Shown: positions 3,480 through 45,239 of the stretch, one piece after another | How the letters are laid out: every line of letters starts with the position of its first letter | Numbering within the stretch: position 1 is the first letter of the stretch | Origin: Chrysemys picta bellii | Taxonomy: Eukaryota | Assembly: GCF_011386835.1 (NCBI RefSeq) | Contig: NC_088810.1 | Location: 23,374,001 to 23,438,000 of the forward strand | Length of the DNA stretch: 64,000 nucleotides | Direction of reading: 5' to 3' | The notes under the pieces: model-generated | What the model was told of the DNA's origin: nothing | Database searches by the model: none | Seen by the model: the letters and a program-made list of their open reading frames with translations, nothing else | Position numbers and translations under genes: made by a program

Positions 3480-4498
3480 AACTATGCTGCATCATAATAT
3501 CGATCTTCTGGTTCTCCTTGTTCCTCCCTCCTTGTTTAAAAATCGTGCTGGAGGAAATTCCTCCCTGTATAGCCGGCAGCACCAGGCACTTCTAAGTTGC
3601 AACTTTCGAAGGCATGGAGTGATAGGAGAATAAAGCCCTTAAAGTGGTTCAAAGTATTATTCAGGCCGTCTGCACAGGGGTGGAGTTCTTCCTCACATTA
3701 TCCGTGTAGCAAAAAGCCTTTTCCTGCTAAGACTTACACAGATTTTCAGTTTAAAATGTCAATATTTCCTTCGATTTCAAATAGACCAATCACATGGTTC
3801 GTGGAAAGTGTCTGTCTTAATCTTCGCTGGATTGCGACCCAGATTTTCAGAAGGAAAAGAAAATTGGCCATCCCTAAAGACAAATTACACTACACCAAAG
3901 TCAGGATCTTCATTGTGATATCAAGAGATTAGTACACTGACCAGTACTTCAATACAGGAATCTCATGGTTTTTTAGGAAACTGTTCCTCACTGCACTCCA
4001 TAGTACCAGTTACCATTTTTATACAACCCCCCAGGGTGCACCATAGCTTGATATTGCAGGAACTGCACATACCAAGACTGCATTTTCTGCTATTTTCTTC
4101 AACATTTTCATGGCTCTCAGTTCCTAGAAGATGAATATTTTCTACTGATTAAAGAAAGGTATTTGCTTAGTGGTTGGTATGTACGTTTGAGCAGACTAGA
4201 ATTATCTGGTACCATCATTTTTCCCATTTGAATTCAATATTGATAGTTTTATTCTTGCACTGCGCATTAACAAGCTTGAAATGTACACACTTGTAATTCC
4301 TTTGGACAATTATTATCCTCATGTATGAAGAAGGCTATGTTAAAGAGACGTCCCACCCTGGTCCTCGTTTCACAAATCTGAAAGAAGTCATTACCATTGG
4401 GTCACAGTGCAGATGGTGACTTCATCCCAATGGGTGTTATGCGTTAAAGCAAGATTTTGACGCTTGAATTATGTACTGTGATTTGCAGTGCTAACACT

Positions 4499-6122
4499 CA
4501 AGGAAAAGAGAGAAATTGACAGACTTGTAATTCCTTTGGAGAGTGTTGTCCTCAAGTATAAAGAAGAAACAATTAAAGTGGTTCAAACGTTAGTCATTTT
4601 TTTATCGTGGATTCTTAGATCTAAGGATGTACACACTATTTCACAAGACCTGTTACTAATGTTGTCTTGTAATAGAGTCTAACAGGGATGAACCTCGAGC
4701 TTGAACTGTGGTAGGGGGAATCAGAACTATTGGGTTATACTTTTGTTTCTGCACCTGACACCCGTGTGACCTTCATCTCCATGTGCCTATTCTTCTATGC
4801 TGATAAAACAAGGAGAGTAAGCATGTTAAGGCTGGAAGTTCTTCAGCATTCTCAGAACTCAAGATTTCAAAGCACCTCGTAAACATTCATTGGTGTTTCA
4901 CACATAAAAAGGGTTGTATTCTTAGAAGATTAATAAATTGTTCCTGGGATTAGACGCCTGTGCAATAGAGTCACTTAAAAAAAAATAGAGGCCAAGGTCT
5001 CTCATGTCATTCCTTTAATCAGGTCACGATTGAAAGCCAAAGAATTTGGGGATATTTTATTTTCATTCTAATGTAATTTTACATTTGGTGTATTTATAGG
5101 AAAATGAAGGTGCTTTCTTGGTGTTAATCAGCACAGTTGCTTCAAATTGAAAGAAGTTCAGGGTCTTAAAGTCCTTCAAGGAAAGCAAGACATTTCTGCC
5201 TTCTTCCCTGGATATAGAATGTACTGCTAGAGATATATTTTACACTTAAAACAACATTCTGGTTCTTGCAGGAATGGTTTATGCAACATAACCTATGGCT
5301 AGTCGGACTCTATGTCAAATAACAGCCAACAGCCCTTTCCTCCTTCACCTATAATCCATGATTTCCATCTCTCCTGGGCTTCTGCCAGGCCTTAGTCAGC
5401 TGCATTATCTTGCAAGACCTTAGTTTCTTGTCAGCTCAGTCATAGAGAGATGGTTTCTAACAAAGTACAAATTCAACCATTTAACTCAAAAATTTTGTAG
5501 AAAAGAGCAGTACTTCCTTTAACTCCCCACTATCCCTTCCATTCACCCAGGAGCAAATCTGGTCTAGGCAACCCTTTGAGATAGCATTGGTGACCCAAGT
5601 GGAGGTCCAATATTAGATCAAGTTTTAATCACCCTAAGGTGAAATTCACCTCTGGGCAGAGGGCCATCACAAAGACCCAGGCTCCACTGAAGTCCCTGAT
5701 AAGACATAGTTTGAAAGTTTAAAGTGGGGCAAAAGTTGTCCATAGGCATCGTAATATCCCTCTGCCAAAAGGTGAATCTGAGACTTAAGGTCACGAAAGG
5801 AAAGACACTGAAGGCAATGGAATGATTCAGATTGTTTTACGAGGTAATCGGATCTCACCCGTTGGGGATGGAGTTTTTGAGAAGGCAGAAAAATGGCTCT
5901 TTGCTTCCTAGCAAGTTTATAATGAGCTGTCCAATGCCCCTAACTATGACCCGCATGAACTGAAAGGACCAAAGTGGATTTCTGCTCATGACAGCCAATT
6001 CTGCTGATGATGCAATTCTGAATCACCTCGACATGCATTCTCATTGCACCACTAAGAAAGTCATTGGAATGATCCTAGGAACGCAGATTGCAACGTGCAT
6101 GTCACTCCATTTGAGGCTGAGA
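4499..6122 (+). repeat. Left arm of the inverted repeat flanking CBP 7498 (gene-less copy of the B-type upstream region)
   Basis: Reverse complement of 8756-10249, apart from a ~130 bp indel. Stops ~140 bp short of where the TATA box would be. Confidence 0.85.
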
Positions 6123-6967
6123 AGGCATGTAGTCTTACCATGAACCATGTGACTGGTCCTTTTGAAATCAAAAGAAATATTTACATTCTTAAAGTGAAAA
6201 TCTGTGTAAGTCTTAGCAGGAAAAGACTTTTTGCTAAACAGATAATGCAAGGAAGAACTCCACCCCCGTGCAGAGGGCCTGAATAATGCTATGAACCATT
6301 TTATGGGCTTTATTATCCTATCACTGCATGCCTTCGAAAGTTGCAGCTTGAGAGGTGTATGGTACTGCCGGCTCTACAGGGATGAATTTTCTCCAGCATG
6401 ATTTTTAAACTAGGAGTGAGGAACAAGGAAAACCAGATGACCGATATTATGATGCAGCATAGTTTTTAATATGAATGAAATTTGCAATACACAGTTACAG
6501 AAAAAAATAATACAGAGCAGAAAGGATGCATTTCAAGTATTTCCGAAAGGGCTGGGACCGATCACCCGCTTCCTCGGGATGCATTTGAGGCAAGATGTTC
6601 TTTTCCCTTTGTTGCAGATGCAGAGTTGGACAAACAAATTAAAGTGATAATAAAGACAACTGATGCCTGGGTTAAGGCCCCTGTTTCCTTCACACTGCGG
6701 GGTTAGTGCAAACAGCCTGAGTGTAATTCAGAATGAGTCCACGCGAGACTAAGAGAATAAGCGCATGGTTGGGAAAGCATTGGCAGAAAGTGTTTACAGG
6801 CATAATATTAGCAATCGGTCTATGATCGAAAGGGGCTGAGCAGACACAGTTCGCATTGAATTCAAGTGGAGCCATGCCTGCCCAGCACTTCTGAAATCTC
6901 TGTCTGAATCTCTAGCTTGTTGTTCATTTCCTGGTCTTTTCTTTTACCATTGATATTCCTGCAGGGT

Positions 6968-7498
6968 TTAACATGGTGTACAGCTTCCACTCAGGTACCT
7001 ATGGCAAGATACCCCGGAACCGCATGCTCCCCCGTAACCGTAACCTCCCCCGTAACCTCCTCCGTAACCACACAGTCCACCGTAACCACTCAATCCCCCG
7101 TAACCATAACGGCCCCCGTAACCACACAATCCACCATAACCTCCCCCGTAACCACACAATCCCCCATAACCTCCCCCGTAACCATAACGGCCCCCGTAAC
7201 CACCTAGTCCCCCATAACCATACAATCCCCCGTAATGGCCTCCATAGCCATACAATCCCCCTAAACCGAATGAGCCCCCGTAGCCGGCTCCGACCACAGG
7301 TGCTCCAACAGCTCCCACTTCACTCTGCTGAGGGAAATTGCTGAGAATTGGTCCTGGGATGGTTACGACAACCGGTGATGGTCTGATGATGACTTCAGAG
7401 TCAGGGCACTGCCTAACGCACGGCTCGTTGCAGCTGCCAGAAACTGGACTGGGTCGGGCCACCCCGCATTCTGGATAGCACAGGCTGGAACAAGACAT
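6968..7498 (-). CDS. Corneous beta-protein, 176 aa, 'B-type' upstream region
   Basis: Same core box and Gly/Tyr tail; ATG at 7498; intron 7520-8548. Confidence 0.95.
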
Positions 7499-8542
7499 CT
7501 TTCTGTGATGGAGGTAAACCTGAAACACACAACAGGGACTAGAGTAAAGAAAAGGTACCAGTGTCAGTGGAAGAAAGGACTCAAACCTTGGTTACTATTG
7601 TAGTGAGGTCACCGTGGGGCCCGAGAGAGAGGAGGAGTAGATTTAGACCCTGTGTTCGTGGCTATGTATTTGTTCCTATTTCCTCTTTCTATACCTCTTA
7701 TCTACTCACACTAAACTTCCCTCCTCATGGGCCCCTTTGAACCCTATTTCATTGACGGACCCCTGGTATTCGCTGTCCATTATAGACATTTCTCAGAGAG
7801 AACATGACTGGGATACTGCTATCATTTCTTTTCCTTTGACGATTCAATCTCTGCATACAAACCAGTGGAGTCCAGGGTCAGAGTGTGGCTTATTGGTTTT
7901 CTAAACCTTGGGAGTCCCCAATACTTGCTGATGAATAAACAGAAACTTTTCTTTTCTCCAAATAAATCACTAAGACAAGATCCTCAGCTCTGGTAAACTG
8001 GGTTCAGATCCACTGACTTCCATGGAGTGACCCTAAATTACATCATCTGAGGAGAAGGATCTTCAGTGGGTATTTCTGCTCATAAGAACGTTGGAATTCC
8101 TAGACTGGATCACACCATTTGTCAGTTTAATCATTCTCCTGCCACCAATACTAAGGAATAAGAGCTACTTCAGAATAAAGTAGAAGACCCCTAAATTGGC
8201 CGTGTAGGGGCTAAACTGGGAAGGTTTCTTCCTAATCTAGCCAAGAGAAAAATGGCTAAGAAAGTTTCTAAAGTTAATTTAAAGATTTAAATTCCCTATT
8301 TCGATTTCCAGTTAATAGGAAATATGTTTCTCAATTGCATCTGGTGCTCCTAAACTCCCCACCGTTGGCTTCAAATCATGGATCCACCACAACTTGCTAC
8401 TGAATATCTACACAAGAGAATTATGGAACAACACTGTCATTCCTGATAAAAATCACAGCGAATATGTGCAAGATTCAGTCTTAAATGGAAATGGATCCTA
8501 CTGTGACATCTCTTGGGTTAGAAAGAGATTGAGTCGAATTGG

Positions 8543-8616
8543 ACTTACCCAGTTGACCGAGGAGCTGAAGTCCAGAGAAGTGTTTAGAAGAACCCTGAGT
8601 CGTGAGTGCTTTTATA
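8543..8616 (-). promoter_or_regulatory. TATA box, exon 1 and donor of CBP 7498
   Basis: TATAAAA at 8616-8610; GTAAGT donor starting at 8548. Confidence 0.8.
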
Positions 8617-8755
8617 CAGTTTCTAGGACTGCCTGGAGGATCTGCGTTGCGTTTTATACAGGAAGTCCCAATTAGTTACCAAACAATCTTAATGGCCTTG
8701 TTAAATCCTCCTTTTGATGGAGCTGTTTTCTCAGGGTTTGGGAGTATTGGGCTAA

Positions 8756-10249
8756 TCTCAGCCTCAAAAGGAGTGACATGCATGTTGCAATCTGCATTCT
8801 TAGTATCATTCCAATGACTTTCTTGGTGGTGCAATGAGAATGCATGTCGAGGTGATTTAGAATTGCATAAGCAGCACAATTGGCTGTCATGAGCAGAAAT
8901 CCACTTTGGTCCTTTCAGTTCATGTGGGTCATAGTTAGGGGCATTGGACGTTTCATTATAAACTTGCTAGGAAGCAAAGAGCCATTTTTCTGCCTTCTCA
9001 AAAGCTCCATCCCCAACGGGTGAGATCCGATTCCCTCGGAAAACAATCAGTATCATTCCATTGCCTTCAGGGTCTTTCCTGTTGTGACCTTAAGTCTCAC
9101 ATTCACCTTTTGGCAGAGGGATAGTACGATGCCTATGGACAACTTCAGCCCCACTTTAAACTTTCAAACTATGTCTTAGCAGGGACTTCAGTGGAGCATG
9201 GGCCTTTGTGATGGCCCTCTGCCCAGAGGTGAATTTCACCAAAGGGTGATTAAACCTTGATCTAACATTGGACCTCCACTTGTGTCACCAATGCTATCTC
9301 AAAGGGTTGCCTAGACCAGATTTGCTCGTGGGTCAATGGAAGGGATAGTGGGGAGTTAAAGGAAGCACTGCTCTTTTCTAGAAAGCTTTTGAGTTAAATG
9401 GTTGAATTTGTACTCTGTTAGAAACCATCTCTCTATGACTGAGCTGACAAGAAACTGAGGTCTTGCAAGATAATGCAGCTGACTAAGGCCTGGCAGAAGC
9501 CCAGGAGAGATGGAAATCATGGATTATGGGTGAAGGAAGAAAGGGCTGTTGGCTGTGATTTGACATAGAGTCCGACCAGCCATAGGTTATGTTGCATAAA
9601 CCATTCCTGCAAGAACCAGAATGTTGTTTTAAGTGTAAAATATATCTCTAGCAGTACATTCTGTATCCAGGGAAGAAGGCAGAAATGTCTTCCTTTGACT
9701 TTAAGACCCTGAACTTCTTTCAATTTGAAGCAACTGTGCTGATTAACACCAAGAAAGCACCTTCATTTTCCTATAAATACACCAAATGTAAAATTACATT
9801 AGAATGAAAATGAAATATCCCCAAATTCTTTGGCTTTGAATCGTGACCTGATTAAAGGAATGACATGAGAGACCTTGGCCTCTATTTATTTTTTAAGTCA
9901 CTCTATTACTCATTGCACAGGCGTCTAATCCCAGGAACAATTTACTAATCTTCTAAGAATACAGCCCTTTTTATGTGTGAAACACCAATGAATGTTTACG
10001 AAGTGCTTTGAACCCAATAGTTCTGATCCTCCCTACCACAGTTCAAGCTCGAGGTTCGTCCCTGTCAGACTCTATTACAAGACAACATTAGTAACTGGTC
10101 TTGTTAAATAGTGTGTGCATCCTTGGATCTAAGCATCCACGATAAAAAAATGACTAACATTTGATCCACATTAATTGTTTCTTCTTTATACTTGAGGACA
10201 ACACTCTCCAAAGGAATTACAAGTCTGTCAATTTCTCTCTTTTCCTTGC
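8756..10249 (-). repeat. Right arm of the inverted repeat flanking CBP 7498 (its true upstream region)
   Basis: Inverted copy of 4499-6122. Confidence 0.85.
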
Positions 10250-10801
10250 ACAAGTGATTGTAGGTGGAGAGCCTCATGTGGTCTCACTTAGGGTGGCTCC
10301 CATGAAGTCAATGGAACAGCGCATATTTAGACCAGCTGAGGAAGTGGTGTTTTGATTTTTTTAAAAAGCCAAACACTTCCCTTCCTTGATCAGCAAGTGT
10401 TGGTGACACACTGAGGTTTATACTCCAAATCAGCACATTATCATGCTGTCCTGAACTCATTTCTAGTTAGAGGTTACATCCTAACAAGGAAAATGGCATT
10501 ATTAATGCTATCCCAGCCAAGTTCTGTGTTATAATTTTAATGGACTGAAAATCCCAAGCATTAGTGATAGAAATTATATACTGCTTAGAGACAGGGTTAT
10601 TTCGGACAAAGAAAATAACAGGGATTCAAAATAGCTAGTTCTTTCTTTCTTTCACTCTCCTTCTGTCTCTCTCTTTAGGTGTCTATGTGACCTCAATTGA
10701 ATTAGGAGCTCAATATAAAATGTTTTATTCCACTTGCCCACACACATTAAATTTACTCTCTTCCCTGCTGTGTGTCTCTGATTTATCGCCACTGCAGAAA
10801 G

Positions 10802-11198
10802 ATGTGTTGTTTCACAAATGCGTGGAGTGACACTCCACAAAGCACGTGTGGACAGCTTCAACAGGCCTTACATAAGGTCGTGCCCTGAGCCCACAGTGTT
10901 GATCCAACCACCCCTCGCTGTCATGACCTTCTGAGGACCAATTCTCAGTTCTTTCCCTCAGGAAAGCGTAGTGGGATCTTCAGCAGAAGCTGACATTAGA
11001 AGTGGTGATGGGGGTGTATGTCGTGATAGAGCCTTATAACGTTATGGAGACTTATATGGTTGGGGGGGTCCCTGTGGTTACGGGACATGACATGGTTATC
11101 GGGGTCCATATGGTTAGGAGAGATTCTATGGTTACAAGGTACCATATGGTTGTGGGAGGAATATAGGGTTGTGGGGGTAGTGATGGGGCCATAGGTAA
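10802..11198 (+). pseudogene. Divergent CBP pseudogene ('C-type'), copy 1
   Basis: Decayed core box ...[42 protein letters not shown]. Frameshift after the ATG, TGA in the core, further stops in the tail. The ancestral TAA aligns with the CBP stop context. Confidence 0.85.
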
Positions 11199-11996
11199 AC
11201 CCAGTAGGCATATCCAAAGAAAAAGGAAGAACCAGGAAATGAACAGCAAGATGCAGATTGAGGTTTTAGCGCATAGCCCTAGTTTTGAGAATTGCCGAGT
11301 ACATCGAACTCTTTGTGAAATAATAAAAGAGCTGCATTTAACCAACACCTCTGCAAACATGCCTAATGTTTCCCATATTTCACATGATGGGTCTTTCTTC
11401 TAATGCCTGCCTGGCTATTTGCTTCCTCTATTATCAACACAGTGGGCCCTGATGATGCAGAGAGAATGGTGCTTGCAATACTCTGGAGCAAATTCCGACT
11501 GAGATGGATTTACTGCATTTCTACAAGCTTGGCAAGGATATAAACTCTTGTGCTTCAGGGTATCATCCAATAATGGAGGTAGATCGGATTGACGGGGGAT
11601 AATGAAAAAGTTCCTCTATGGGCAGGTGATCCCATACCTGTGTTCTACGGGGTTTCTTGCACCTCCCTGTGAAGCCTCTGGCACTCACCACTGTGGGAGA
11701 GAGGCCTGATTTGCTGCAGCAATGCCTGTGTTCTTCCATACCAAGGAAGGGTCATTAGGTGTATTCTGACATTGAGGAATAGAGCTGTATTGCCCTTAAA
11801 TAAAACCCGGTGGCAGATGGCTAAATCTCCCCTCATTGTGTGAGTATTACATCATATCATTGAAGAGTCAGGAAGGTCTGGATACATTTTTCCTTTTGTG
11901 TTGTTAAATCAAAAATTTGATCTGTGGAAAATATTCATCTACTGGGAACTGAGAGCCATGAAAATGTTGAAGAAAAGCATAGTAGAAAATGCAAGT

Positions 11997-21069: not shown

Positions 21070-21111
21070 CTTTCTGCACTGGCGATAAATCGGAGACACA
21101 TAGCAGGGAAG

Positions 21112-29329: not shown

Positions 29330-30739
29330 CAAGGAAAGGAGAGAAATTGACAGACTTGTAATTCCTTTGGAGAGTGTTGTCCTCAAGTATAAAGAAGAAA
29401 CAATTAAAGTGGTTCAAACGTTAGTCATTTTTTTATCGTGGATTCTTATATCTAAGGATGTACACACTATTTCACAAGACCTGTTACTAATGTTGTCTTG
29501 TAAAAGAGTCTAACAGGGATGAACCTCGAGCTTGAACTGTGGTAGGGGGAATCAGAACTATTGGGTTGTACTTTTGTTTCTGCACCTGACACCCGTGTGA
29601 CCTTCATCTCCATGTGCCTATTGCTCTATGCTGATAAAACAAGGAGAGTAAGCATGTTAAGGCTGGAAGTTCTTCAGCATTCTCAGAACTCAAGATTTCA
29701 AATAACCTCGTAAACATTCATTGGTGTTTCACACATAAAAAAGTTTGTATTCTTAGAAGATTAATAAATTGTTCCTGGGATTAGGCACCTGTGCAATAGA
29801 GTCACTTAAAAAAAATAGACGCCAAGGTCTTTCATGTCATTCCTTTAATCAGGTCACGATTCAAAGCCAAAGAATTTGGGGATATTTCATTTTCATTCTA
29901 ATGTAATTTTACATTTGGTGTATTTATAGGAAAATGAAGGTGCTTTCTTGGTGTTAATCAGCACAGTTGCTTCAAATTGAAAGAAGTTCAGGGTCTTAAA
30001 GTCCTTCAAAGAAAGGAAGACATTTCTGCCTTCTTGTTTCTTAGTTTCTTGTCAGCTCAGTCATAGAGAGATGGTTTCTAACAAAGTACAAATTCAACCA
30101 TTTAACTCAAAAATTTTGTAGAAAAGAGCAGTACTTCCTTTAACTCCCCACTATCCCTTCCATTGACCCATGAGCAAATCTGGTCTAGGCAACCCTTTGA
30201 GATAGCATTGGTGACCCAAGTGGAGGTCCAATGTTAGATCAAGTTTTAATCACCCTAAGGTGAAATTCACCTCTGGGCAGAGGGCCATCACAAAGGCCCA
30301 GGCTCCACTGAAGTCCCTGATAAGACATAGTTTGAAAGTTTAAAGTGGGGCGAAAGTTGACCATAGGCATCGTACTATCCCTCTGCCAAAAGGTGAATCT
30401 GAGATTTAAGGTCACGAAAGGAAAGACACTGAAGGCAATGGAATGATTCTGATTTTTTTACGAGGTAATCGGATCTCACCCGTTGGGGATGGAGTTTTTG
30501 AGAAGGCAGAAAAATGGCTCTTTGCTTCCTAGCAAGTTTATAATGAGCTGTCCAATGCCCCTAACTAAGACCCGCATGAACTGAAAGGACCAAAGTGGAT
30601 TTCTGCTCATGACAGCCAATTCTGCTGATGATGCAATTCTGAATCACCTCGACATGCATGCTCATTGCACCACTAAGAAAGTCATTGGAATGATACTAGG
30701 AACGCAGATTGCAACGTGCATGTCATGTTGAGGCTGAGA
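29330..30739 (+). repeat. Left inverted-repeat arm around CBP 32115
   Basis: Paralog of 4499-6122 with an extra internal deletion near 30035. Confidence 0.8.
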
Positions 30740-31584
30740 AGGCATGTAGTCTTACCATGAACCATGTGATTGGTCCTTTTGAAATCAAAAGAAATATTTA
30801 CATTCTTAAAGTGAAAATCTGTGTAAGTCTTAGCAGGAAAAGACTTTTTGCTAAACAGATAATGCAAGGAAGAACTCCACCCCCGTGCAGAGGGCCTGAA
30901 TACTGGTATGAACCATTTTATGGGCTTTATTATCCTATCACTCCATGCCTTCGAAAGTTGCAGCTTGAGAGGTGTATGGTACTGCCGGCTCTACAGGGAT
31001 GAATTTTCTCCAGCATGATTTTTAAACTAGGAGTGAGGAACAAGGAAAACCAGATGACCGATATTATGATGCAGCATAGTTTTTAATATGAATGAAATTT
31101 GCAATACACAGTTACAGAAAAAAATAATACAGAGCAGAAAGGATGCATTTCAAGTATTTCCAAAAGGGCTGGGACCGATCACCCGCTTCCTCGGGATGTA
31201 TTTGAGGCAAGATGTTCTTTTCCCTTTGTTGCAGATGCAAAGTTGGTCAAAGAAATTAAAGTGATAATAAAGACAACTGATGCCTGTGTTAAGGCCCCTG
31301 TTTCCTTCACACTGCGGGGTTAGTGCAAACAGCCTGAGTGTAATTCAGAATGAGTCCACGTGAGACTAAGAGAATAAGCGCATGGTTGGGAAAGCATTGG
31401 CAGAAAGTGTTTACAGGCATAATATTAGCAATCGGTCTATGATCGAAAGGGGCTGAGCAGACACAGTTCGCATTGAATTCAAGTGGAGCCATGCCTGCCC
31501 AGCACTTCTGAAATCTCTGTCTGAATCTCTAGCTTGTTGTTCATTTCCTGGTCTTTTCTTTTACCATTGATATTCCTGCAGGGT

Positions 31585-32115
31585 TTAACATGGTGTACAG
31601 CTTCCACTCAGGTACCTATGGCAAGATACCCCGGAACCGCATGCTCCCCCATAACCGTAACCTCCCCCGTAACCTCCTCCGTAACCACACAGTCCACCGT
31701 AACCACTCAATCCCCCGTAACCATAACGGCCCCCGTAACCACACAATCCCCCATAACCTCCCCCGTAACCACACAATCCCCCATAACCTCCCCCGTAACC
31801 ATAACGGCCCCCGTAACCACCTAGTCCCCCATAACCATACAATCCCCCGTAATGGCCTCCATAGCCGTACAATCCCCCCAAACCGAATGAGCCCCCGTAG
31901 CCGGCTCCGACCACAGGTGCTCCAACGGCTCCCACTTCACTCTGCTGAGGGAAATTGCTGAGAATTGGTCCTGGGATGGTTACGACAACCGGTGATGGTC
32001 TGATGATGACTTCAGAGTCAGGGCACTGCCTAACGCACGGCTCGTTGCAGCTGCCAGAAACTGGACTGGGTCGGGCCACCCCGCATTCTGGATAGCACAG
32101 GCTGGAACAAGACAT
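31585..32115 (-). CDS. Corneous beta-protein, 176 aa, B-type
   Basis: Intact; same translation as CBP 7498 in the ORF track; intron 32137-33153. Confidence 0.95.
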
Positions 32116-33147
32116 CTTTCTGTGATGGAGATAAACCTGAAACACACAACAGGGAATAGAGTAAAGAAAAGGTACCAGTCTCAGTGGAAGAAAGGACTCA
32201 AGCCTTGGTTACTATAGTAGTGAGGTCACCGTGGGGCCCGAGAGAGAGGAGGAGTGGATTTAGACCCTATGTTCGTGGCTATGTATTTGTTCCTATTTCC
32301 TCTTTCTATACCTCTTATCTACTCACACTAAACTTCCCTCCTCATGGGCCCCTTTGAACCCTATTTCATTGACGGACCCCTGGTATTCGCTGTCCATTAT
32401 AGACATTTCTCAGAGAGAACATGACTGGGATACTGCTATCATTTCTTTTCCTTTGACGATTCAATCTCTGCATACAAACCAGTGGAGTCCAGGGTCAGAG
32501 TGTGGCTTATTGGTTTTCTAAACCTTGGGAGTCCCCAATACTTGCTGATGAATAAACAGAAAGTTTTCTTTTCTCCAAATAAATCACTAAGACAAGATCC
32601 TCAGCTCTGGTAAACTGGGTTCAGATCCACTGACTTCCATCGAGTGACCCTAAATTATACCATCTGAGGAGAAGACTCTTCTGCTCATAAGAACGTTGGA
32701 ATTCCTAGACTGGATCACACCATTTGTCAGTTTAATCATTCTCCTGCCACCAATACTAAGGAATAAGAGCTACTTCAGAATAAAGTAGAAGACCCCTAAA
32801 TTGGCCGTGTAGGGGCTAAACTGGGAAGGTTTCTTCCTAATCTAGCCAAGAGAAAAATGGCTAAGAAAGTTTCTAAAGTTAATTTAACGATTTAAATTCC
32901 CTATTTCGATTGCCAGTTAATAGGACATATGTTTCTCAATTGCATCTGGTGCTCCTAAACTCCCCACCTTTGGCTTCAAATCATGGATCCACCACAACTT
33001 GCTACTGAATATCTACACAAGAGAATTATGGAACAACACTGTCATTCCTGATAAAAATCACAGAGAATACGTGCAAGATTCAGTCTTAAATGGAAATGGA
33101 TCCTACTGTGACATCTCTTGGGTTAGAAAGAGATTGAGTCGAATTGG

Positions 33148-33221
33148 ACTTACCCAGTTGACCGAGGAGCTGCAGTCCGGAGAAGTGTTTAGAAGAACCC
33201 TGAGTCGTGAGTGCTTTTATA
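33148..33221 (-). promoter_or_regulatory. TATA box, exon 1 and donor of CBP 32115
   Basis: TATAAAA at 33221-33215; donor starting at 33153. Confidence 0.8.
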
Positions 33222-33360
33222 CAGTTTCTAGGACTGCCTGGAGGATCTGCGTTGTGTTTTATACAGGAAGCCCCAATTAGTTACCAAACAATCTTAATGA
33301 CCTTGTTAAATCCTCCTTTTGATGGAGCTGTTTTCTCAGGGTTTGGGAGTATTGGGGTAA

Positions 33361-34861
33361 TCTCAGCCTCAAAAGGAGTGACATGCATGTTGCAATCTGC
33401 GTTCTTAGTATCATTCCAATGACTTTCTTGGTGGTGCAATGAGAATGCATGTCAATGTGATTTAGAATTGCATCAGCAGCACAATTGGCTGTCATGAGCA
33501 GAAATCTACTTTGGTCCTTTCAGTTCATGCGGGTCATAGTTAGGGGCATTGGACAGTTCATTATAAACTTGCTAGGAAGCAAAGAGCCATTTTTCTGCCT
33601 TCTCAAAAGCTCCATCCCCAACGGGTGAGATCCGATTCCCTCGGAAAACAATCAGTATCATTCCATTGCCTTCAGTGTCTTTCCTGTCGTGACCTTAAGT
33701 CTCAGATTCACCTTTTGGCAGAGGGATAGTACGATGCCTATGGACAACTTCAGCCCCACTTTAAACTTTCAAACTATGTCTTAGCAGGGACTTCAGTGGA
33801 GCATGGGCCTTTGTGATGGCCCTCTGCCCAGAGGTGAATTTCACCAAAGGGTGATTAAACCTTGATCTAACATTGGACCTCCACTTGTGTCACCAATGCT
33901 ATCTCAAAGGGTTGCCTAGACCAGATTTGCTCATGGGTCAATGGAAGAGATAGTGGGGAGTTAAAGGAAGCTCTGCTCTTTTCTAGAAAGCTTTTGAGTT
34001 AAATGGTTGAATTTGTACTCTGTTAGAAACTATCTCTCTATGACTGAGCTGACAAGAAACTGAGGTCTTGCAAGATAATGCAGCTGACTAAGGCCTGGAA
34101 GAAGCCCAGGAGAGATGGAAATCATGGATTATGGGTGAAGGAGGAAAGGGCTGTTGGCTGTCATTTGACATAGAGTCCGACCAGCCATAGGTTATGTTGC
34201 ATAAAGCATTCCTGCAAGAACCAGAATGTTGTTTTAAGTGTAAAATATATCTCTAGCAGTACATTCTATATCCAAGGAAGAAGGCAGAAATGTCTTCCTT
34301 TCTTTGAAGGACTTTAAGACCCTGAACTTCTTTCAATTTGAAGCAACTGTGCTGATTAACACCACGAAAGCACCTTCATTTTCCTATAAATACACCAAAT
34401 GTAAAATTACATTAGAATGAAAATGAAATATCCCCAAATTCTTTGGCTTTGAATCGTGCCCTGATTAAAGGAATGACATGAGAGACCTTGCCCTCTATTT
34501 ATTTTTTAAGTCACTCTATTACTCATTGCACAGGCGTCTAATCCCAGGAACAATTTACTAATCTTCTAAGAATACAACCCTTTTTATGTGTGAAACACCA
34601 ATGAATGTTTACGAAATGCTTTGAACCCAATAGTTCTGATCCTCCCTACCACAGTTCAAGCTCGAGGTTCGTCCCTGTTAGACTCTATTACAAGACAACA
34701 TTAGTAACTATTCTTGTTAAATAGTGCGTGCATCCTTGGATCTAAGCATCCACGATAAAAAAATGACTAACGTTTGATCCACATTAATTGTTTCTTCTTT
34801 ATACTTGAGGACAACACTCTCCAAAGGAATTACAAGTCTGTCAATTTTTCTCTTTTCCTTG
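33361..34861 (-). repeat. Right inverted-repeat arm around CBP 32115
   Basis: Paralog of 8756-10249. Confidence 0.8.
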
Positions 34862-38393: not shown

Positions 38394-40503
38394 ACCCTGC
38401 AGGAATATCAATGGTAAAAGAAAAGACCAGGAAATGAACAACAAGCTAGAGATTCAGATAGAGATTTCAGAAGTGCTGGGCAGGCATGGCTCCACTTGAA
38501 TTCAATGCGAACTGTGTCTGCTCAGCCCCTTTCGATCATAGACCAATTGCTAATATTATGCTTATAAACTCTTTCTGCCAATGCTTTCCCAACCACGCGC
38601 TTATTCTCCTAGTCACATGTGGACTCATTCTGAATTGCACTCAAGCTGTTTGCACTAACCCCGCAGTGTGAAGGAAACAGGGGCCTTAACACAGGCATCA
38701 GTTGTACTTCTTATCACTTTAATTTGTTTGTCCAACTCTGTACCTGCAGCAAAGGAAAAAGAACATCTTGCCTCAAATGCATCCCAAGGAAGCGGGTGAT
38801 CGGTCCCAGCCCGTCTCGAAATACTTGAAATACATCCTTTCTGCTCTGTTTTATTTCTTTCTGTAACTGTGAATTGCAAATTTCATTCTCATTAAAAACT
38901 ATGCTGCATTATAATATTGATCTTCTGGTTGTCCTTGTTCAAAAATCGTGCTGGAGGAAATTCCTCCCTGTATAGCCAGCAGCACCAGGAACTTCTAAGT
39001 TGCAACTTTCGAAGGCATGGAGTGATAGGAGAATAAAGCCCTTAAAGTGGTTCAAAGCATTATTCAGGCCGTCTGCACAGGGCGGAGTTCTTCCTTGCAT
39101 TATCCGTGTAGCAAAAAGCCTTTTCCTGCTAAGACTTACACAGATTTTATATTTAAAATGTCAATATTTCCTTCGACTTCAAAAAGACCAATCACATGGT
39201 TCGTGGAAAGTGTCTGTGTTAATCTTTGCTGGACAGCGACCCAGATTTTCAGAAGGAAAAGAAAATTGGCCATCCCTAAAGACAAATTACACTACACCAA
39301 AGGCAGGATCTTCATTGTGATATCAAGAGATTAGTACACTGACCAGTACTTCAATACAAGAACCTCATGGTTTTTTAGGAAACTGTTCCTCACTGCACTC
39401 CATAGTACCATTTACCATATTTATACAAACCCCCCGGGTGCACCATAGCTTGATATTGCAGGAACTGCACATACCAAGACAGCATTTTCTACTATTTTCT
39501 TCAACATTTTCATGGCTCTCAATTCATAGAATAGAATTATCTGGTACCATCATTTTTCCCATTTGAATTCCATATTGATAGTTTCATTCTTGCACTGCGC
39601 ATTAACAAGTTTGAAATGTACACACTTGTAATTCCTTTGGACAATTATTATCCTCATGTATGAAGAAGGCTATGTTAAAGCGACGTCCCACCCTGGTCCT
39701 CGTTTCACAAATCATTACCATTGGGTCACTATGACTCATTATAGAAATGTGTTTCCAAGGAAAGAAAAAGTAGAAAACACAGTGCAGATGGTGACTTCAT
39801 CCCAATGGGTGCTATGCGTTAAGGCAAGCTTTTGACGCTTGAATTATGTACTGTGATTTGCAGTGCTAACACGCAAGGAAAAGAGAAAAATTGACAGACT
39901 TGTAATTCCTTTGGAGAGTGTTGTCCTCAAGTATAAAGAAAACACAATTAATGTGGATCAAACATTAGTCATTTTTTTATCGTGGATGCTTAGATCCAAC
40001 GATGCACAGACTATTTAACAAGACATGTTCCTAATGTTGTCTTGTAATACAGTCTAACAGGGGTGAACCTCGAACTTAAACTGTGGTAGGGGGAATCAGA
40101 ATTATTGGGTTGTACTTCTGTTTCTGCACCTGACACCCCTGTGACCTTCACCTCCATGTGCCTATTGCTCTATGCTGATAAAACAAGGAGAGTAAGCATG
40201 TTAAGGCTGGAAGTTCTTCAGCATTCTCAGAACTCAAGATTTCAAAGCACCTCGTAAACATACATTGGTGTTTCACACATAAAAAGGGTTGTATTCTTAG
40301 AAGATTAATAAATTGTTCCTGGGATTAGACACCTGTACAATGAGTAATAGAGTCACTTAAAAAAAATAGAGGCCAATACTCCCAAACCCTGAGAAAACAG
40401 CTCCATCAAAAGGATTTAACAAGGCCATTAAGATTGTTTGGTAACTAATTGGGGCTTCCTGTATAAAACACAACGCAGATCCTCCAGGCAGTTCTAGAAA
40501 CTG

Positions 40504-40577
40504 TATAAAAGCACTCACGACTCAGGGTTCTTCTAAACACTTCTCCGGACTTCAGCTCCTCGGTCAACTGGGTAAGT
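40504..40577 (+). promoter_or_regulatory. TATA box, exon 1 and donor of CBP 41665
   Basis: TATAAAA 40504-40510; GTAAGT at 40572. Confidence 0.8.
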
Positions 40578-41664
40578 CCAATTCGACTCAATCTATTTCT
40601 AACCCAAGAGATGTCACAGTAGGATCCATTTCCATTTAAGAGTGAATCTTGCACGTATTCGCTGTGATTTTTATCAGGAATGACAGTGTTGTTCCATAAT
40701 TCTCTTGTGTAGATATTCAGTAGCAAGTTGTGGTGGATCCATGATTTGAAGCCAAAGGTGGGGAGTTTAGGAGCACCAGATGCAATTGAGAAACGTATTT
40801 CCTATTACCTGGAAATCGAAATAGGGAATTTAAATCTTTAAATTAACTTTAGAAACGTTCTTAGCCATTTTTCTCTTGGCTAGATTAGGAAAAAACTTTC
40901 CCAGTTTAGCCCCTACACGGCCAACTTAGGGGTCTTCTACTTTATTCTGAAGTAGCTCTCATTCCTTGGTATAGGAGGCAGGAGAATGATTAAACTGACA
41001 AATGGTGTGATCAGGTATAGGAATTCCAACGTTCTTATGAGCAGAAATACCCACTGAAGATTCTTCTCCTCAGATGGTGTAATTTAGGGTCACTCCATGG
41101 AAGTCAGTGGATCTGAACCCAGTTTACCAGAGCTGAGGATCTTGTCTTAGTGATTTATTTGGAGAAAGGAAAAGTTTCTGTTTATTCATCAGCAAGTATT
41201 GCGGACTCCCAAGGTTTAGAAAAACAATAAGCCACACTCTGACCCTGGACTCCACTGGTTTGTATGCTGAGATTGAATCCTCAAAGGAAAAGAAATGATA
41301 GCATCCCAGCCTTGTTCTCTCTGAGAAATGTCTATAATGGACAGCAAATCCCAGGGGTCCATCAATGAAATAGTTACACTTATTCCAGGCGGTGTTTTTC
41401 AGACAAAGTCATTGAGAAGGGTTCAAAGGGGCCCATGAGGAGGGAAGTTTAGTGTGAGTAGATAAGAGGTATAGAACGAGGAAATAGGAACAAATACATA
41501 GCCACGAACATAGGGTTTAAATCCACTCCTCCTCTCTCTCGGGCCCCACGGTGACCTCACTACTATAGTAACCAAGGTTTGAGTCCTTTCTTCCACTGAC
41601 ACTGGTACCTTTTCTTTACTCTAGTCCCTGTTGTGTGTTTCAGGTTCATCTCCATCACAGAAAG

Positions 41665-42195
41665 ATGTCTTGCTCCAGCCTGTGCTATCCAGAATGCGGG
41701 GTGGCCCGACCCAGTCCAGTTTCTGGCAGCTGCAACGAGCCCTGCGTTAGGCAGTGCCCTGACTCTGAAGTCATCATCAGACCATCACCAGTTGTTGTAA
41801 CCATCCCAGGACCAATTCTCAGCAATTTCCCTCAGCAGAGTGAAGTGGGAGCTGTTGGAGCACCTGTGGTCGGAGCAGGCTACGGGGGCTCATTCGGTTT
41901 GGGGGGATTGAACGGCTATGGAGGCCATTACGGAGGATTGTATGGTTATGGGGGATTAGGTGGTTACGGGGGCCGTTATGGTTACGGGGGATTGAGTGGT
42001 TATGGGGGAGGTTACGGGGGACTGTGTGGTTACGGGGGCCGTTATGGTTATGGGGGATTGAGTGGTTACGGCGGCCGTTATGGTGGACTGTGTGGTTACG
42101 GAGGAGGTTACGGGGGAGGTTACGGTTATGGGGGAGCATGCGGTTCCGGGGTATCTTGCCATAGGTACCTGAGTGGAAGCTGTACACCATGTTAA
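41665..42195 (+). CDS. Corneous beta-protein, 176 aa, B-type (cassette in flipped orientation)
   Basis: Intact; intron 40572-41643. Confidence 0.95.
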
Positions 42196-44241
42196 ACCCT
42201 GCAGGAATATCAATGGTAAAAGAAAAGACCAGGAAATGAACAAAAAGCTAGAGATTCAGACAGAGATTTCAGAAGTGCTGGGCAGGCATGGCTCCACTTG
42301 AATTCAATGCGAACTGTGTCTGCTCAGCCCCTTTATCTCATAGACCGATTGCTAATATTATGCTTGTAAACACTTTCTGCCAATGCTTTCCCCAACCACG
42401 CGCTTATTCTCTTAGTCACACGTGGACTCATTCTGAATTACACTCAGGCTGTTTGCACTAACCCCGCAGTGTGAAGGAAAAAGGGGCCTTAACACAGGCA
42501 TCAGTTGTCTTTATTATCACTTTAATTTGTTTGTCCAACTCTGCATCTGCAACAAAGGGAAAAGAACATCTTGCCTCAAATGCATCCCAAGGAAGCGGGT
42601 GATCAGTCCCAACCCCTTTTGGAAATACTTGAAATGCATCCTTTCTGCTCTGTATTATTTTTTTTTGTAACTGTGTATTGCAAATTTCATTCATATTAAA
42701 AAGTATGCTGCATCATAATATCGGTCATCTGGTTTTCCTTGTTCCTCACTCATGCTGGAGAAAATTCATCCCTGTAGAGCCGGCAGTACCAGACACCTCT
42801 CAAGCTGCAACTTTCGAAGGCATGTAATGATAGAAGAATAAAGCCCATAAAATGGTTCATAGCAGTATTCAGGCCCTCTGCACAGGGGTGGAGTTCTTCC
42901 TTGCATTATCTGTTTAGCAAAAAGTCTTTTCCTGCTAAGACTTTCACAGATTTTCACTTTAAGAATGTAAATATTTCCTTTGATTTCAAAAGGACCAATC
43001 ACATGGTTCGTGGTAAGACTACATGCCTTCTAAGCCTCAAATGGAGTGACATGCTTGTTGCAATCTGCGTTCCTAGTATCATTCCAATGACTTTCTTGGT
43101 GGTGCAATGAGAATGCATGTCGAGGTGATTCAGAATTGCATCAGCAGCGCAATTGGCTGTCATGAGCAGAAATCCACTTTGGTCTTTTCAGTTCATGCGG
43201 GTCATAGTTAGGGGCATTGGACAGCTCATTATAAACTTGCTAGGAAGCAAAGAGCCATTTTTCTGCCTTCTCAAAAGCTCCATCCCCAACGGGTGAGATC
43301 CGATTCACTCGAAAACAATCAGAATCATTCCATTGCCTTCAGTGTCTTTCCTGTCGAGACCTTAAGTCTCAGATTCACCTTTTGGCAGAGGGATAGTACG
43401 ATGCCTATGGACAACTTTAGCCCCACTTTAAACTTGCAAACTATGTCTTAGCAGGGACTTCAGTGGAGTATGGGCCTTTGTGATGGCCCTCTGCCCAGAG
43501 GTGAATTTCACCTAAGGGTGATTAAACCTTGATCTAACATTGGACCTCCACTTGTGTCACCAATGCTATCTCAAAGGATTGCCTAGACCAGATTTGCTCA
43601 AGGGTCAATGGAAGAGATAGTGGGGAGTTAAAGGAAGCAGTGCTCTTTTCTAGAAAGCTTTTGAGTTAAATGATTGAATTTGTACTCTGTTAGAAACCAT
43701 CTCTCTATGACTGAGCTGACAAGAAACTGAGGTCTTGCAAGATAATGCAGCTGACTAAGGCCTGGAAGAAGCCCAGGAGAGATGGAAGTCATGGATTATG
43801 GGTGAAGGAGGAAAGGGCTGTTGGCTGTGATTTGACATAGAGTCCGACCAGCCATAGGTTATGTTGCATAAACCATTCCTGCAAGAACCAGAATGTTGTT
43901 TTAAGTGTAAAATATATCTCTAGCAGTACATTCTGTATCCAGGGAAGAAGGCGGAAATGTCTTCCTTTGACTTTAAGACCCTGAACTTCTTTCAATTTGA
44001 AGCAACTGTGCTGATTAACACCAAGAGAGCACCTTATTTTCCTATAAATACACCAAATGTAAAATTACATTAGAATGAAAATGAAATATCCCCAAATTCT
44101 TTGGCTTTGAATTGTGACCTGATTAAAGGAATGACATGAGAGACCTTGGCCTCTATTTTTTTTTAAGTGACTCTATTACTCATTGCACAGGCGTCTAATC
44201 CCAGGAACAATTTACTAATCTTCTAAGAATACAACCCTTTT

Positions 44242-44997
44242 GATAGGTTTCAGAGTAACAGCCGTGTTAGTTTGTATCCGCAAAAAGAAGAACAGGAGTA
44301 CTTGTGGCACCTTAGAGACTAACAAATTTATTAGAGCATAAGCTTTCGTGGACTACAGCCCACTTCTTCGGATGCATATAGAATGGAACATATATTGAGG
44401 AGATATATATACACACATACAGAGAGAATAAACAGGTGGGAGTTGTCTTACCAACTCTGAGAGGCCAATTAATTAAGAGAAAAAAACTTTTGAAGTGATA
44501 ATCAAGCTAGCCCAGTACAGACAGTTTGATAATAAGTGTGAGAGTACTTACAAGGGGAGATAGAGTCAATGTTTGTAATGGCTCAGCCATTCCCAGTCCT
44601 TATTCAAACCGGAGTTGATTGTGTCTAGTTTGCATATCAATTCTAGCTCAGCAGTCTCTCTTTGGAGTCTCTTTTTGAAGTTTTTCTGTTGTAATATAGC
44701 CACCCGCAGGTCTGTCACTGAATGACCAGACAGGTTAAAGTGTTCTCCCACTGGTTTTTGAGTATTTTGATTCCTGATGTCAGATTGTCCATTAATTCTT
44801 TTGCGTAGAGACTGTCCGGTTTGGCCAATGTACATGGCAGAGGGGCATTGCTGGCACATGATGGCATATATCACATTGGTAGATGTGCAGGTGAACGAGC
44901 CCCTGATGGTATGGCTGATGTGATTAGGTCCTATGATGATGTCACTTGAATAGATATGTGGACAGAGTTGGCATCGGGGTTTGTTACCTATCCTTGT
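44242..44997 (-). mobile_element. 5'-truncated Penelope-like retroelement (GIY-YIG endonuclease C-terminus plus terminal repeat)
   Basis: 44566-~44988 encodes ...FTCTSTNVIYAIMCQQCPSAMYIGQTGQSLRKRING...HFNLSGHS...ETAELELICKLDT. Absent from the paralogous sites at ~9970 and ~34585. Confidence 0.9.
44334..44371 (-). ncRNA. Hammerhead-ribozyme-like motif in the Penelope terminal repeat (variant core CCGAAGA)
   Basis: Minus strand: CCGAAGA-A-GTGGGCT/AGTCCAC-GAAA-GC-TTAT-GC-TC. Stem I not identified. Confidence 0.45.
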
Positions 44998-45239
44998 AAT
45001 AGTTCTGATCCTCCCTACCACAGTTCAAGCTCGAGGTTCATCCCTGTTAGACTCTATTACAAGACAACATTAGTAACAGGTCTTGTTAAATACTGTGTGC
45101 ATCCTTGGATCTAAGCATCCACGATAAAAAAATTACTAACATTTGATCCACATTAATTGTTTCTTCTTTATACTTGAGGACAATACTCTCCAAAGGAATT
45201 ACAAGTCTGTCAATTTTTCTCTTTTCCTTGCACAAGTGA

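What the first reader, a model, noticed from the sequence alone, without database searches (positions are those of the whole stretch)
4499..10249. CBP gene cassette between ~1.5 kb inverted repeats, present in both orientations (possible flip-flop inversion)
Seen: the B-type CBP and ~0.85 kb of its 3' flank are joined, through a fixed junction (..CATGGTT(C)RTGG-TAAGACTACATGCCTTC-T(C/A)AGCCTC..), to an inverted copy of the gene's own upstream region. The same junction occurs at ~6115-6140, ~30735-30760 and ~43010-43035, so it arose once. All three copies have the same outer context: A-type gene 3' flank on the left, C-type pseudogene on the right, long-form indel marker on the left, short form on the right. 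The gene points minus at 7498 and 32115 but plus at 41665. The arm at 43031-43300 is a mosaic of left-arm and right-arm diagnostic bases (e.g. GACAGCTCATT left-like, AAAAGCTCC right-like). Inference: recombination between the arms inverted the cassette at least once. Both arms are upstream sequence, so flipping keeps the gene under a similar promoter region and could be a recurrent polymorphism.
Basis: partly seen in the sequence, partly recalled or inferred. Interest (0 to 1): 0.7.

Follow-up and report, generated by a model that had tools for sequence, protein, structure and literature searches.

The report
Old inversion in turtle beta-keratin cluster
In a turtle scale/shell-keratin gene cluster, one of three duplicated gene cassettes was turned around once, long ago, in an event that used the flanking inverted repeats and destroyed most of one; it is ordinary gene-cluster evolution, not an active switch.

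Summary
A corneous beta-protein gene (Pfam PF02422) lies between inverted arms at 4499-6122 and 8756-10248, about 95% alike. One joint with a 15-nt filler occurs exactly three times. The gene is minus at 7498 and 32115 and plus at 41665.

The flip-flop reading is not supported.
- The three copies are old paralogues. Copy 3 differs from copies 1 and 2 by about 3.3%; copies 1 and 2 differ by about 1.5-2%.
- Copy 3 is the derived state. Its left joint (CCAA microhomology at 40373-40376) is new, whereas copies 1 and 2 keep the native joint there.
- The event removed 1.13 kb of copy 3's left arm. A 754-bp insert later split the right arm, leaving only 234 + 88 nt of inverted repeat.
- The arms are diverging, not homogenised. 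The longest identical runs are 115, 93 and 47 bp.
- The TATA box, exon 1 and intron lie inside the flipped segment, so the arms do not supply the promoter.

One exchange inside arm homology is logically required. The mosaic of diagnostic bases is real but statistically thin (p = 0.17).

Earlier scan notes record similar inverted CBP structures elsewhere in this genome.

The parts
4499..6120 (+). Left arm L1: upstream-type sequence (F, a1, a2) in the orientation of a plus-strand unit, without core promoter or gene. It continues natively from the S flank (3809-4498) behind the A-type gene.
6121..6137 (-). Joint J of copy 1: end of the 3' flank + 15-nt filler (TAAGACTACATGCCT) + inner end of the arm
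6138..6967 (-). 3' flank (t) of the B1 gene, homologous to the 3' flanks of all other units up to the joint
6968..7498 (-). B1 coding exon: 176-aa corneous beta-protein plus stop
   Evidence: PF02422, E 1.7e-29
7499..8757 (-). Proximal upstream region p. Inferred intron 7503-8548 (AG acceptor 7503-7504, GT donor 8543-8548), short non-coding exon 1 from 8549, conserved TATAAAAG at 8609-8616.
   Evidence: exon structure inferred from consensus signals and the family's known two-exon layout, no RNA data
8758..10248 (-). Right arm R1: native distal upstream region of B1, contiguous with p as in undisturbed units
29330..30737 (+). Left arm L2 of copy 2, lacking the equivalent of 5206-5418
30738..30754 (-). 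Joint J of copy 2
30755..33362 (-). Cassette body of copy 2 (t, gene 32115->31585, p)
33363..34861 (-). Right arm R2 of copy 2. It holds a short L2-like conversion tract at about 34268-34309.
39873..40372 (+). Stub of the left arm in copy 3 (equivalent to 4499-4995, long-form marker present)
40373..40376 (+). Joint J2, unique to copy 3: CCAA microhomology joining arm position ~4995 to proximal upstream position ~8750. This is 5-9 nt inside the inner edge of the inverted repeat and 128 bp upstream of the TATA box (40504-40511).
40377..43013 (+). Cassette body of copy 3 in plus orientation (p, intact 176-aa gene 41665-42195, t), 96.5-97.3% identical to copies 1 and 2
43014..43030 (+). Joint J of copy 3, reverse complement of the joint in copies 1 and 2
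43031..44244 (-). Right arm of copy 3. The outer ~900 bp are nearer to R1/R2 (97.5%) than to L (95.3%); the inner ~220 bp are nearest to L1 (95.9%). The switch is bounded by informative sites to 43225-43514.
44245..44997 (-). 754-bp interspersed-repeat insertion (with a ~42-bp deletion of arm sequence) splitting the right arm of copy 3
   Evidence: Pfam found nothing
44998..45231 (-). Outermost part (F) of the right arm of copy 3, followed by the C-type pseudogene

Best explanation
The window is part of a turtle corneous beta-protein (beta-keratin) gene array built from segmental duplications in both orientations. An ancestral block read: S flank, left arm, joint J, minus-strand gene unit, right arm, C pseudogene. 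The left arm is the promoter-less upstream part of a plus-oriented unit. J is a one-off joint between that arm and the end of the 3' flank of the neighbouring minus-strand unit. This block was duplicated into the copy-3 lineage and the copy-1/2 lineage (about 3.3% apart), and copies 1 and 2 separated later (about 1.5-2%). In the copy-3 lineage the transcription unit (core promoter, exon 1, intron, coding exon, 3' flank, 2.6 kb) was inverted once. One new joint lies within arm homology, which leaves J on the right with a right arm that is left-like next to J and right-like further out. The other new joint, J2, is a CCAA microhomology joint from mid left arm to a point 5-9 nt inside the inner edge of the inverted repeat, and it removes 1.13 kb of the left arm. 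My preferred mechanism (inferred) is a single inverted-repeat-guided repair or replication event with one homologous and one microhomology template switch or end join. The alternative is a homologous flip followed by a separate deletion. The event is ancient and probably fixed. It left copy 3 with too little inverted repeat to flip back, and the arms of copies 1 and 2 are decaying. The gene's promoter travels with it, so orientation as such should not change expression.
For: Shown:
- The repeat architecture and joint J are real.
- All three genes are intact PF02422 proteins.
- The tree ((1,2),3) is the same for S, p, gene, t, right arm and C.
- The p-to-arm joint in copies 1 and 2 is identical to that of the undisturbed units U5, A1 and G13, whereas J2 in copy 3 is novel. 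This makes copy 3 the derived state.
- J2 has 4-nt microhomology and lies 5-9 nt from the inner edge of the repeat.
- The right arm of copy 3 has 22 mismatches to R1 against 42 to L1 over the outer ~900 bp (binomial p = 0.017). It shares R-derived states at 5623/5636 and an L-derived state at 5926.
- The longest identical runs between arms are 115, 93 and 47 bp.
- Only 234 + 88 nt of inverted repeat remain in copy 3.
- TATA box and splice signals are conserved inside the flipped segment.
From the literature:
- Inverted-repeat-mediated rearrangements with one junction in the repeat and a second junction with 1-4 bp microhomology are documented (PMC4352052).
- Real flip/flop regions have homogenised arms (PMC9731477).
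Against: - No reads or second assembly could be consulted, so fixation and the assembly of copy 3 are untested.
- The mosaic pattern is not significant on its own (Fisher p = 0.17 and 0.14-0.40).
- The right arms R1/R2, the U5 arm and the copy-3 arm are mutually closer (2.5-2.9%) than their neighbouring sequences are. Some arm-to-arm or paralogue gene conversion has therefore blurred the history.
- One short L2/R2 conversion tract shows that the arms of copy 2 have interacted since the last duplication.
- The one-step mechanism rests mainly on the closeness of J2 to the repeat edge, which I estimate at roughly 1% by chance.
Confidence: 0.7

Rival explanations
1. Copy-3-like is the ancestral state. 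J and J2 are the two reciprocal joints of one simple end-joining inversion of the transcription unit inside a native minus-strand unit, which would explain why they lie 5-9 nt apart in native sequence. Copies 1 and 2 would then have arisen by a second inversion through the outer arm stubs, plus gap-filling gene conversion that restored a full right arm.
For: The J arm-side breakpoint and the J2 promoter-side breakpoint are only 5-9 nt apart in native sequence. The right arms R1/R2 are significantly closer to the U5 arm (2.9%) than the adjoining p region is (5.1%), as a converted patch would be.
Against: It needs at least three further steps. It predicts that the left arms L1/L2 and the copy-3 right arm are each other's closest relatives along their whole length. 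Instead they are the most distant pair (95.3% against 97.5% to R), and copy 3 shares none of the ~10 polarised L-derived states outside the inner 200 bp. It also requires exact restoration of the 5 lost nucleotides and 1.13 kb.
Confidence: 0.12
2. Active flip-flop: the cassette in one or more copies still inverts recurrently by homologous recombination between its arms and is polymorphic in the population.
For: Copies 1 and 2 still have 1.4-1.6 kb inverted arms. One short arm-to-arm conversion tract in copy 2 shows physical interaction since the last duplication. Human inversions flanked by inverted repeats are often recurrent (PMC3961182).
Against: Both orientations are seen only between paralogues 3.3% apart. 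Copies 1 and 2 kept the same orientation through ~2% divergence. The arms are 95% alike and not homogenised, with a longest identical run of 115 bp. Documented cases break in near-identical tracts (PMC3961182, PMC9731477). Copy 3 has lost the substrate.
Confidence: 0.05
3. Assembly artefact: the plus orientation of copy 3 is a mis-join or mis-orientation in a repetitive array.
For: The region is a dense array of 90-98% similar repeats.
Against: Copy 3 is not a re-used copy of cassettes 1 or 2. It is 3.3% diverged throughout and carries private features: J2, the 754-bp insertion, and its own coding-repeat variant. The only inverted repeats that could mislead an assembler here are 234 and 88 nt at 92-95%, far shorter than long reads.
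Confidence: 0.05
4. Independent duplications: the plus-oriented arrangement arose separately, without any inversion of a shared cassette.
For: The array contains other native plus-oriented units (for example 15597-19542) and other inverted arm fragments (14699-14906).
Against: The identical 15-nt filler joint in all three copies, and the closest-relative status of the copy-3 body to B1/B2 rather than to native plus units (96.7% against 92-94.6%), rule out an independent origin.
Confidence: 0.02

Closest known systems
Inverted-repeat-mediated two-junction rearrangements (BIR/MMBIR; DUP-TRP/INV-DUP at PLP1 and MECP2; PMC4352052)
   Same: One junction lies inside inverted homology and inverts a segment. 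The second junction is non-recurrent with 1-4 bp microhomology. Both occur next to a gene flanked by inverted low-copy repeats.
   Different: Here the event is an ancient product seen in a germline reference sequence, not a de novo copy-number gain. Whether duplication and inversion happened together is unknown. The arms are ~1.5 kb rather than tens of kb.
Recurrent NAHR inversions between inverted segmental duplications (human polymorphic inversions, PMC3961182; yeast chromosome XIV flip/flop region, PMC9731477)
   Same: A gene-bearing segment lies between inverted repeats, both orientations exist, and structural-protein gene families are involved (the KRTAP5-10/11 example in PMC3961182).
   Different: Those arms contain long near-identical tracts, are homogenised, and both survive each flip. 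Here the arms are 95% alike with at most 115 bp of identity, one arm was destroyed by the event, and the two orientations are at paralogous rather than allelic loci.
Turtle beta-keratin / corneous beta-protein clusters expanded by tandem and segmental duplication (PMC4760078, PMC3673632, PMC4054807)
   Same: Same gene family (PF02422), the same clustered organisation with many near-identical paralogues and pseudogenes, and a neighbouring EDAA-like gene noted by the scan.
   Different: The passages of those papers that I searched for the words inversion, orientation and gene conversion describe duplication and translocation and report no inverted-repeat cassettes; PMC3673632 ran GENECONV on coding sequences and reported no gene conversion. 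This specific inversion and its joints did not appear there.

Membership tests
Corneous beta-protein (sauropsid beta-keratin, Pfam PF02422) | Core-box domain matching PF02422 above the gathering score | tested here: met
   101.7 and 100.6 bits against a cut-off of 25 for the genes at 7498 and 41665
Corneous beta-protein (sauropsid beta-keratin, Pfam PF02422) | Two-exon gene: short non-coding exon 1, one intron, whole coding sequence in exon 2 | tested here: inconclusive
   A conserved TATAAAAG, a GT donor ~60 nt downstream, and an AG acceptor 4 nt before the ATG are present in all intact units. No RNA evidence was available.
Corneous beta-protein (sauropsid beta-keratin, Pfam PF02422) | Membership of a tandem cluster of paralogues | tested here: met
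   14 CBP-like loci in 64 kb
Flip-flop (recurrent NAHR) inversion between inverted repeats | Segment flanked by inverted repeats | tested here: met
   Copies 1 and 2 have 1.4-1.6 kb arms. In copy 3 only 234 + 88 nt remain.
Flip-flop (recurrent NAHR) inversion between inverted repeats | Both orientations found at the same (allelic or orthologous) locus | not testable with these tools
   Only paralogous copies within one assembly could be compared.
Flip-flop (recurrent NAHR) inversion between inverted repeats | Arms near-identical or homogenised, with long uninterrupted identity as recombination substrate | tested here: not met
   L against R is 95.5% by substitutions plus indels of 8, 116 and 213 bp. 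The longest identical runs are 115, 93 and 47 bp.
Flip-flop (recurrent NAHR) inversion between inverted repeats | Reciprocal product: both arms retained and chimeric after a flip | tested here: not met
   The left arm of copy 3 ends at a CCAA joint after ~500 bp, and 1.13 kb is missing.
Inverted-repeat-mediated two-junction rearrangement (BIR/MMBIR type) | One junction inside inverted homology | tested here: inconclusive
   Logically required by the flanks (J-arm-S against J-arm-C). Distances and polarised sites place it at 43225-43514, but the site counts are not significant.
Inverted-repeat-mediated two-junction rearrangement (BIR/MMBIR type) | Second junction non-homologous, with short microhomology | tested here: met
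   J2...GAGGCCAA | TACTCCC, with 4 nt shared with native ...GCCCAATACTCCC
Inverted-repeat-mediated two-junction rearrangement (BIR/MMBIR type) | Formed in one event, typically with copy-number gain | not testable with these tools
   The block is a paralogous duplicate, but the order of duplication and inversion cannot be resolved from one assembly.

The most novel reading that the evidence does not exclude
The cassettes of copies 1 and 2 (and other inverted-repeat CBP cassettes in this array) are still invertible in the germline, so gene orientation in the turtle beta-keratin array would be a standing, recurrent structural polymorphism, and copy 3 would be a flipped cassette locked by loss of an arm.
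Probability: 0.04. Interest if true: 0.5.

Novelty: new member of a known kind. Interest (0 to 1): 0.2.

Why it matters
It gives a base-pair-resolved example of how a reptile skin-protein gene array changes gene orientation. An inverted-repeat-guided event left one homologous and one microhomology joint and removed its own substrate. This helps in reading the many head-to-head and tail-to-tail CBP arrangements in turtle genomes, and it warns against reading paralogue orientation differences as active switches. It has no evident regulatory or functional consequence, because the promoter moves with the gene, and it opens no new question.

Tried and rejected
- Pfam found nothing for the 151-aa ORF of the 754-bp insertion, even at E = 10. 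My impression that it is a Penelope-like element fragment (a GIY-YIG-like motif) comes from memory only.
- The breakpoint statistics on diagnostic sites gave no significant result (Fisher tests).
- I considered and rejected a recent tandem duplication of the whole 24.6-kb period as the source of copy 3. The high-identity duplication ends at 14698/39287, and copy 3 is nearer to B1/B2 than to its positional counterpart U5.
- I considered a haplotype-duplication artefact for copies 1 and 2. Their 1.5-2.8% divergence plus indels is too high.
- The costly protein searches were not used, because Pfam settled the family.
- The species name (painted turtle) comes from an earlier unchecked scan note and from my recognition of the sequences. 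It was not verified here.


Full report
WHAT THE WINDOW IS

The 64-kb window has no N and about 42% GC. It holds 14 loci related to one small gene. Seven are intact ORFs of 166-176 aa that are almost identical to one another: 2477+, 7498-, 18365+, 27250+, 32115-, 41665+ and 48461-. The genes at 7498 and 41665 match Pfam PF02422 (sauropsid beta-keratin, or corneous beta-protein, CBP) at about 101 bits against a cut-off of 25.

The other loci are two truncated 'D-type' genes (13423+, 38025+; 64-aa ORFs), four 'C-type' pseudogenes (about 10824+, 21020-, 35433+, 45797+) and a divergent one (56969-). An earlier scan note calls the genome painted turtle. I did not verify that. The sequences and a turtle-typical interspersed repeat fit it. 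The published background is a family of about 100 genes in turtles, expanded by tandem and segmental duplication (PMC4054807, PMC3673632, PMC4760078).

ANATOMY OF A UNIT

Painting the window with reference pieces gives a native unit of this form: S flank, F, a1, a2 (the 'arm'), p (proximal upstream), g (coding exon) and t (3' flank). The unit at 15597-19542 (U5, plus strand) is an undisturbed example.

Within p, all intact units share three signals:
- a TATAAAAG box;
- about 60 nt further on, a CTGG|GTAAGT donor;
- an AG acceptor 4 nt before the ATG.

In the finding's gene these lie at 8609-8616, 8543-8548 and 7503-7504, all on the minus strand. This is the two-exon layout expected for the family. 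It is inferred from sequence; no RNA data were available.

CHECK OF THE OBSERVATION

The arms are real. They span 4499-6122 and 8756-10248 in four gapless blocks that are 93-98% complementary. The left arm has about 116 extra bp at 4737-4852.

The joint TAAGACTACATGCCTTC occurs without mismatch at 6121-6137(-), 30738-30754(-) and 43014-43030(+) and nowhere else. Only 0.11 matches with up to 3 mismatches are expected by chance. Alignment with six native 3' flanks shows that homology stops after ...CACATGGTTCRTGG. The native sequence continues AAAGTGTCTG..., whereas the three cassettes continue with a 15-nt filler and then the inner end of the arm. The joint J therefore arose once. The orientations are minus, minus and plus.

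ARE THE THREE CASSETTES COPIES OF ONE BLOCK?

Yes. Substitution-only identities of copy 3 against copies 1 and 2 are:
- S flank: 96.4-97.1%;
- p: 96.5-96.7%;
- gene: 96.7-97.3%;
- t: 96.7%;
- right arm (outer part): 97.4-97.5%;
- C pseudogene: 97.4-97.8%.

Copies 1 and 2 are 97.9-98.7% alike in the same pieces. Every piece gives the tree ((1,2),3).

Copies 1 and 2 belong to a 14.7-kb duplication (1-14698 against 24552-39287, 97.2% with gaps). The gene to the left of copy 3 is the D-type pseudogene, not an A-type gene, although its 3' flank is A-like.

WHAT IS DIFFERENT IN COPY 3

The 3.9 kb at 40370-44244 is the reverse complement of 4904-8753. The flip is not clean, for three reasons.

First, the left arm of copy 3 is only a stub (39873-40376, equivalent to 4499-4995). 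It is joined directly to p at ...GAGGCCAA|TACTCCC.

Second, the native sequence at that point reads ...GAGGCTGAGA TTAGC CCAA TACTCCC..., and joint J breaks it after GAGA. The new joint, which I call J2, therefore uses a 4-nt CCAA microhomology only 5-9 nt inside the inner edge of the inverted repeat. It removes 1.13 kb of the left arm.

Third, the right arm (43031-44244) is interrupted at 44245-44997 by a 754-bp insertion, with loss of about 42 bp of arm. Only 234 + 88 nt of inverted repeat are left around copy 3, at 92-95%.

POLARITY

In copies 1 and 2 the p-to-arm transition is identical to that of the undisturbed units U5, A1 and G13. In copy 3 it is the non-native J2. Copy 3 is therefore the derived, inverted state, and minus is the ancestral orientation of the cassette.

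WERE THE ARMS INVOLVED?

Logic requires it. J is attached to the inner end of an arm. In copies 1 and 2 that arm runs outward into S (the left flank); in copy 3 it runs outward into the C pseudogene (the right flank). Because J arose once, one lineage must have had an exchange somewhere within the arm.

The sequence agrees, but only modestly:
- Over the outer ~900 bp, the copy-3 arm has 22 mismatches to R1 and 42 to L1 (binomial p = 0.017). Over the inner 222 bp it is nearest to L1.
- With A-type arms as outgroup, copy 3 shares R-derived states at 5623 and 5636. It shares none of about 10 L-derived states outward of 5874.
- It shares the L-derived state at 5926 and groups with L at 6020, 6078 and 6109. 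There is one conflicting site, 6095.
- This bounds a switch to 43225-43514.

The contrast between inner and outer sites is not significant by itself (Fisher p = 0.17). The mosaic is therefore compatible with one exchange but does not prove it.

MECHANISM (INFERRED)

Two routes fit. Route (a) is a homologous flip followed by an unrelated 1.13-kb deletion. Route (b) is one inverted-repeat-guided event with one homologous and one microhomology joint.

I prefer (b). An independent deletion would end within 9 nt of the repeat edge only about 1% of the time (my estimate: 9-18 nt out of roughly 1270 permissible). The pattern of one junction in the inverted repeat plus a second junction with 1-4 bp microhomology is a documented signature of inverted-repeat-mediated BIR/MMBIR events (PMC4352052).

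A concrete version runs as follows. The arms pair in single-stranded DNA, so the 2.6-kb body forms the loop. A stalled 3' end at arm position ~4995 re-anneals through CCAA at the first unpaired bases of the loop. It copies the body and J in reverse, then returns by homology from the left-arm to the right-arm template. No step of this was shown here.

A rival history makes copy 3 ancestral, with J and J2 as reciprocal joints of one end-joining inversion. It explains the 5-9 nt spacing neatly. It needs several further steps, however, and it predicts that L and the copy-3 arm are closest relatives, which they are not. I give it about 0.12.

WHY NOT A FLIP-FLOP

1. The two orientations are seen only between paralogues about 3.3% apart. 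Copies 1 and 2 kept one orientation through about 2% divergence. [quoted passage not shown]
2. The arms are not homogenised. L against R is 95.5% by substitutions, with indels of 8, 116 and 213 bp. The longest identical runs are 115 bp (L1/R1), 93 bp (L2/R2) and 47 bp (copy-3 stubs). In the yeast flip/flop region the arms are almost identical and continually homogenised (PMC9731477). In human inversions mediated by inverted repeats the breakpoints lie in tracts of high identity (PMC3961182).
3. The one event we can see destroyed its substrate.
4. The promoter argument does not hold. TATA box, exon 1 and intron are inside the flipped piece, 142 bp from the arm edge. The arms are distal upstream sequence only, and copy 3 lost about -130 to -1260 upstream of its TATA box instead of swapping it.

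One caveat applies. R2 carries a short L2-like tract at about 34268-34309: an 8-bp indel, a state shared only by L2 and R2, and one further L-like base. The arms of copy 2 have therefore interacted at least once since the last duplication, and rare exchange is not excluded.

ASSEMBLY

I could not test the assembly with reads. Neither was retried, and no other route was tried.

Internal evidence argues against a mis-join. Copy 3 is diverged from the other cassettes along its whole length and has private joints and a private insertion. The inverted repeats left around it are far shorter than long reads.

CONTEXT AND VERDICT

The same window holds other inverted paralogous blocks (45724-54367 against 15948-28423) and an inverted arm fragment at 14699-14906. 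Earlier unchecked notes of this scan describe head-to-head CBP palindromes, arm-to-arm conversion and a deletion scar at a palindrome centre elsewhere in this array. Orientation changes and repeat-edge deletions therefore look routine in this gene family.

The inference of one arm-associated inversion is supported. The recurrent flip-flop and the promoter argument are not. This is a new, well-resolved instance of a known kind of rearrangement, of modest interest.

Noticed in passing
window 34268-34309 (R2) and 30035-30040 (L2): R2 carries an L-type 8-bp indel, one state shared only with L2, and one further L-like base. This is a short arm-to-arm gene-conversion tract within copy 2. On the L2 side it lies directly beside the 213-bp deletion that L2 has relative to L1 (5206-5418).
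   Followed up: partly
window 44245-44997: 754-bp interspersed-repeat insertion with short terminal inverted ends (GATAGGT...ACCTATC) and a 151-aa ORF on the minus strand (44566-45021). Its motif ...YIGQTGQSLRKRI... reminds me of the GIY-YIG domain of Penelope-like elements. Pfam found nothing even at E = 10.
   Followed up: partly
window 12332-14698 and 36940-39287: The D-type genes (13423+, 38025+) have ORFs cut to 64 aa. D1, the copy aligned, lacks the conserved TATA-box region; an A-type arm fragment (11995-12331, and 36603-36939 before D2) replaces the normal upstream. They are probably dead genes.
   Followed up: partly
window 2477, 7498, 27250, 41665, 48461: The first 71 residues are 100% identical in five genes, and coding DNA is 95-98% alike between A-type and B-type units whose introns and flanks are only 80-91% alike. 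This points to strong purifying selection or coding-sequence homogenisation. The glycine-tyrosine repeat region varies by whole repeat units (166-176 aa).
   Followed up: no
window 45724-54367 vs 15948-28423: Large inverted paralogy. C3 plus the minus-strand gene at 48461 and its upstream mirror the U5 unit plus the inverted C pseudogene and the A2 upstream region (84-97% in pieces). The cluster therefore contains inversions or inverted duplications on a scale of several kb beyond the finding.
   Followed up: partly
window 14699-14906: A ~200-bp fragment of an A-type arm (a2 outer end plus a1) lies in inverted orientation directly behind the 3' flank of D1. It is another small inverted-arm scar.
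   Followed up: no
window 39825-40199: The F to a1 stub of copy 3 is more diverged from its counterparts (93.3-94.4%) than every other piece of the block (96.4-97.8%). I have no explanation; it may be a converted patch or locally raised mutation near the J2 joint.
   Followed up: no
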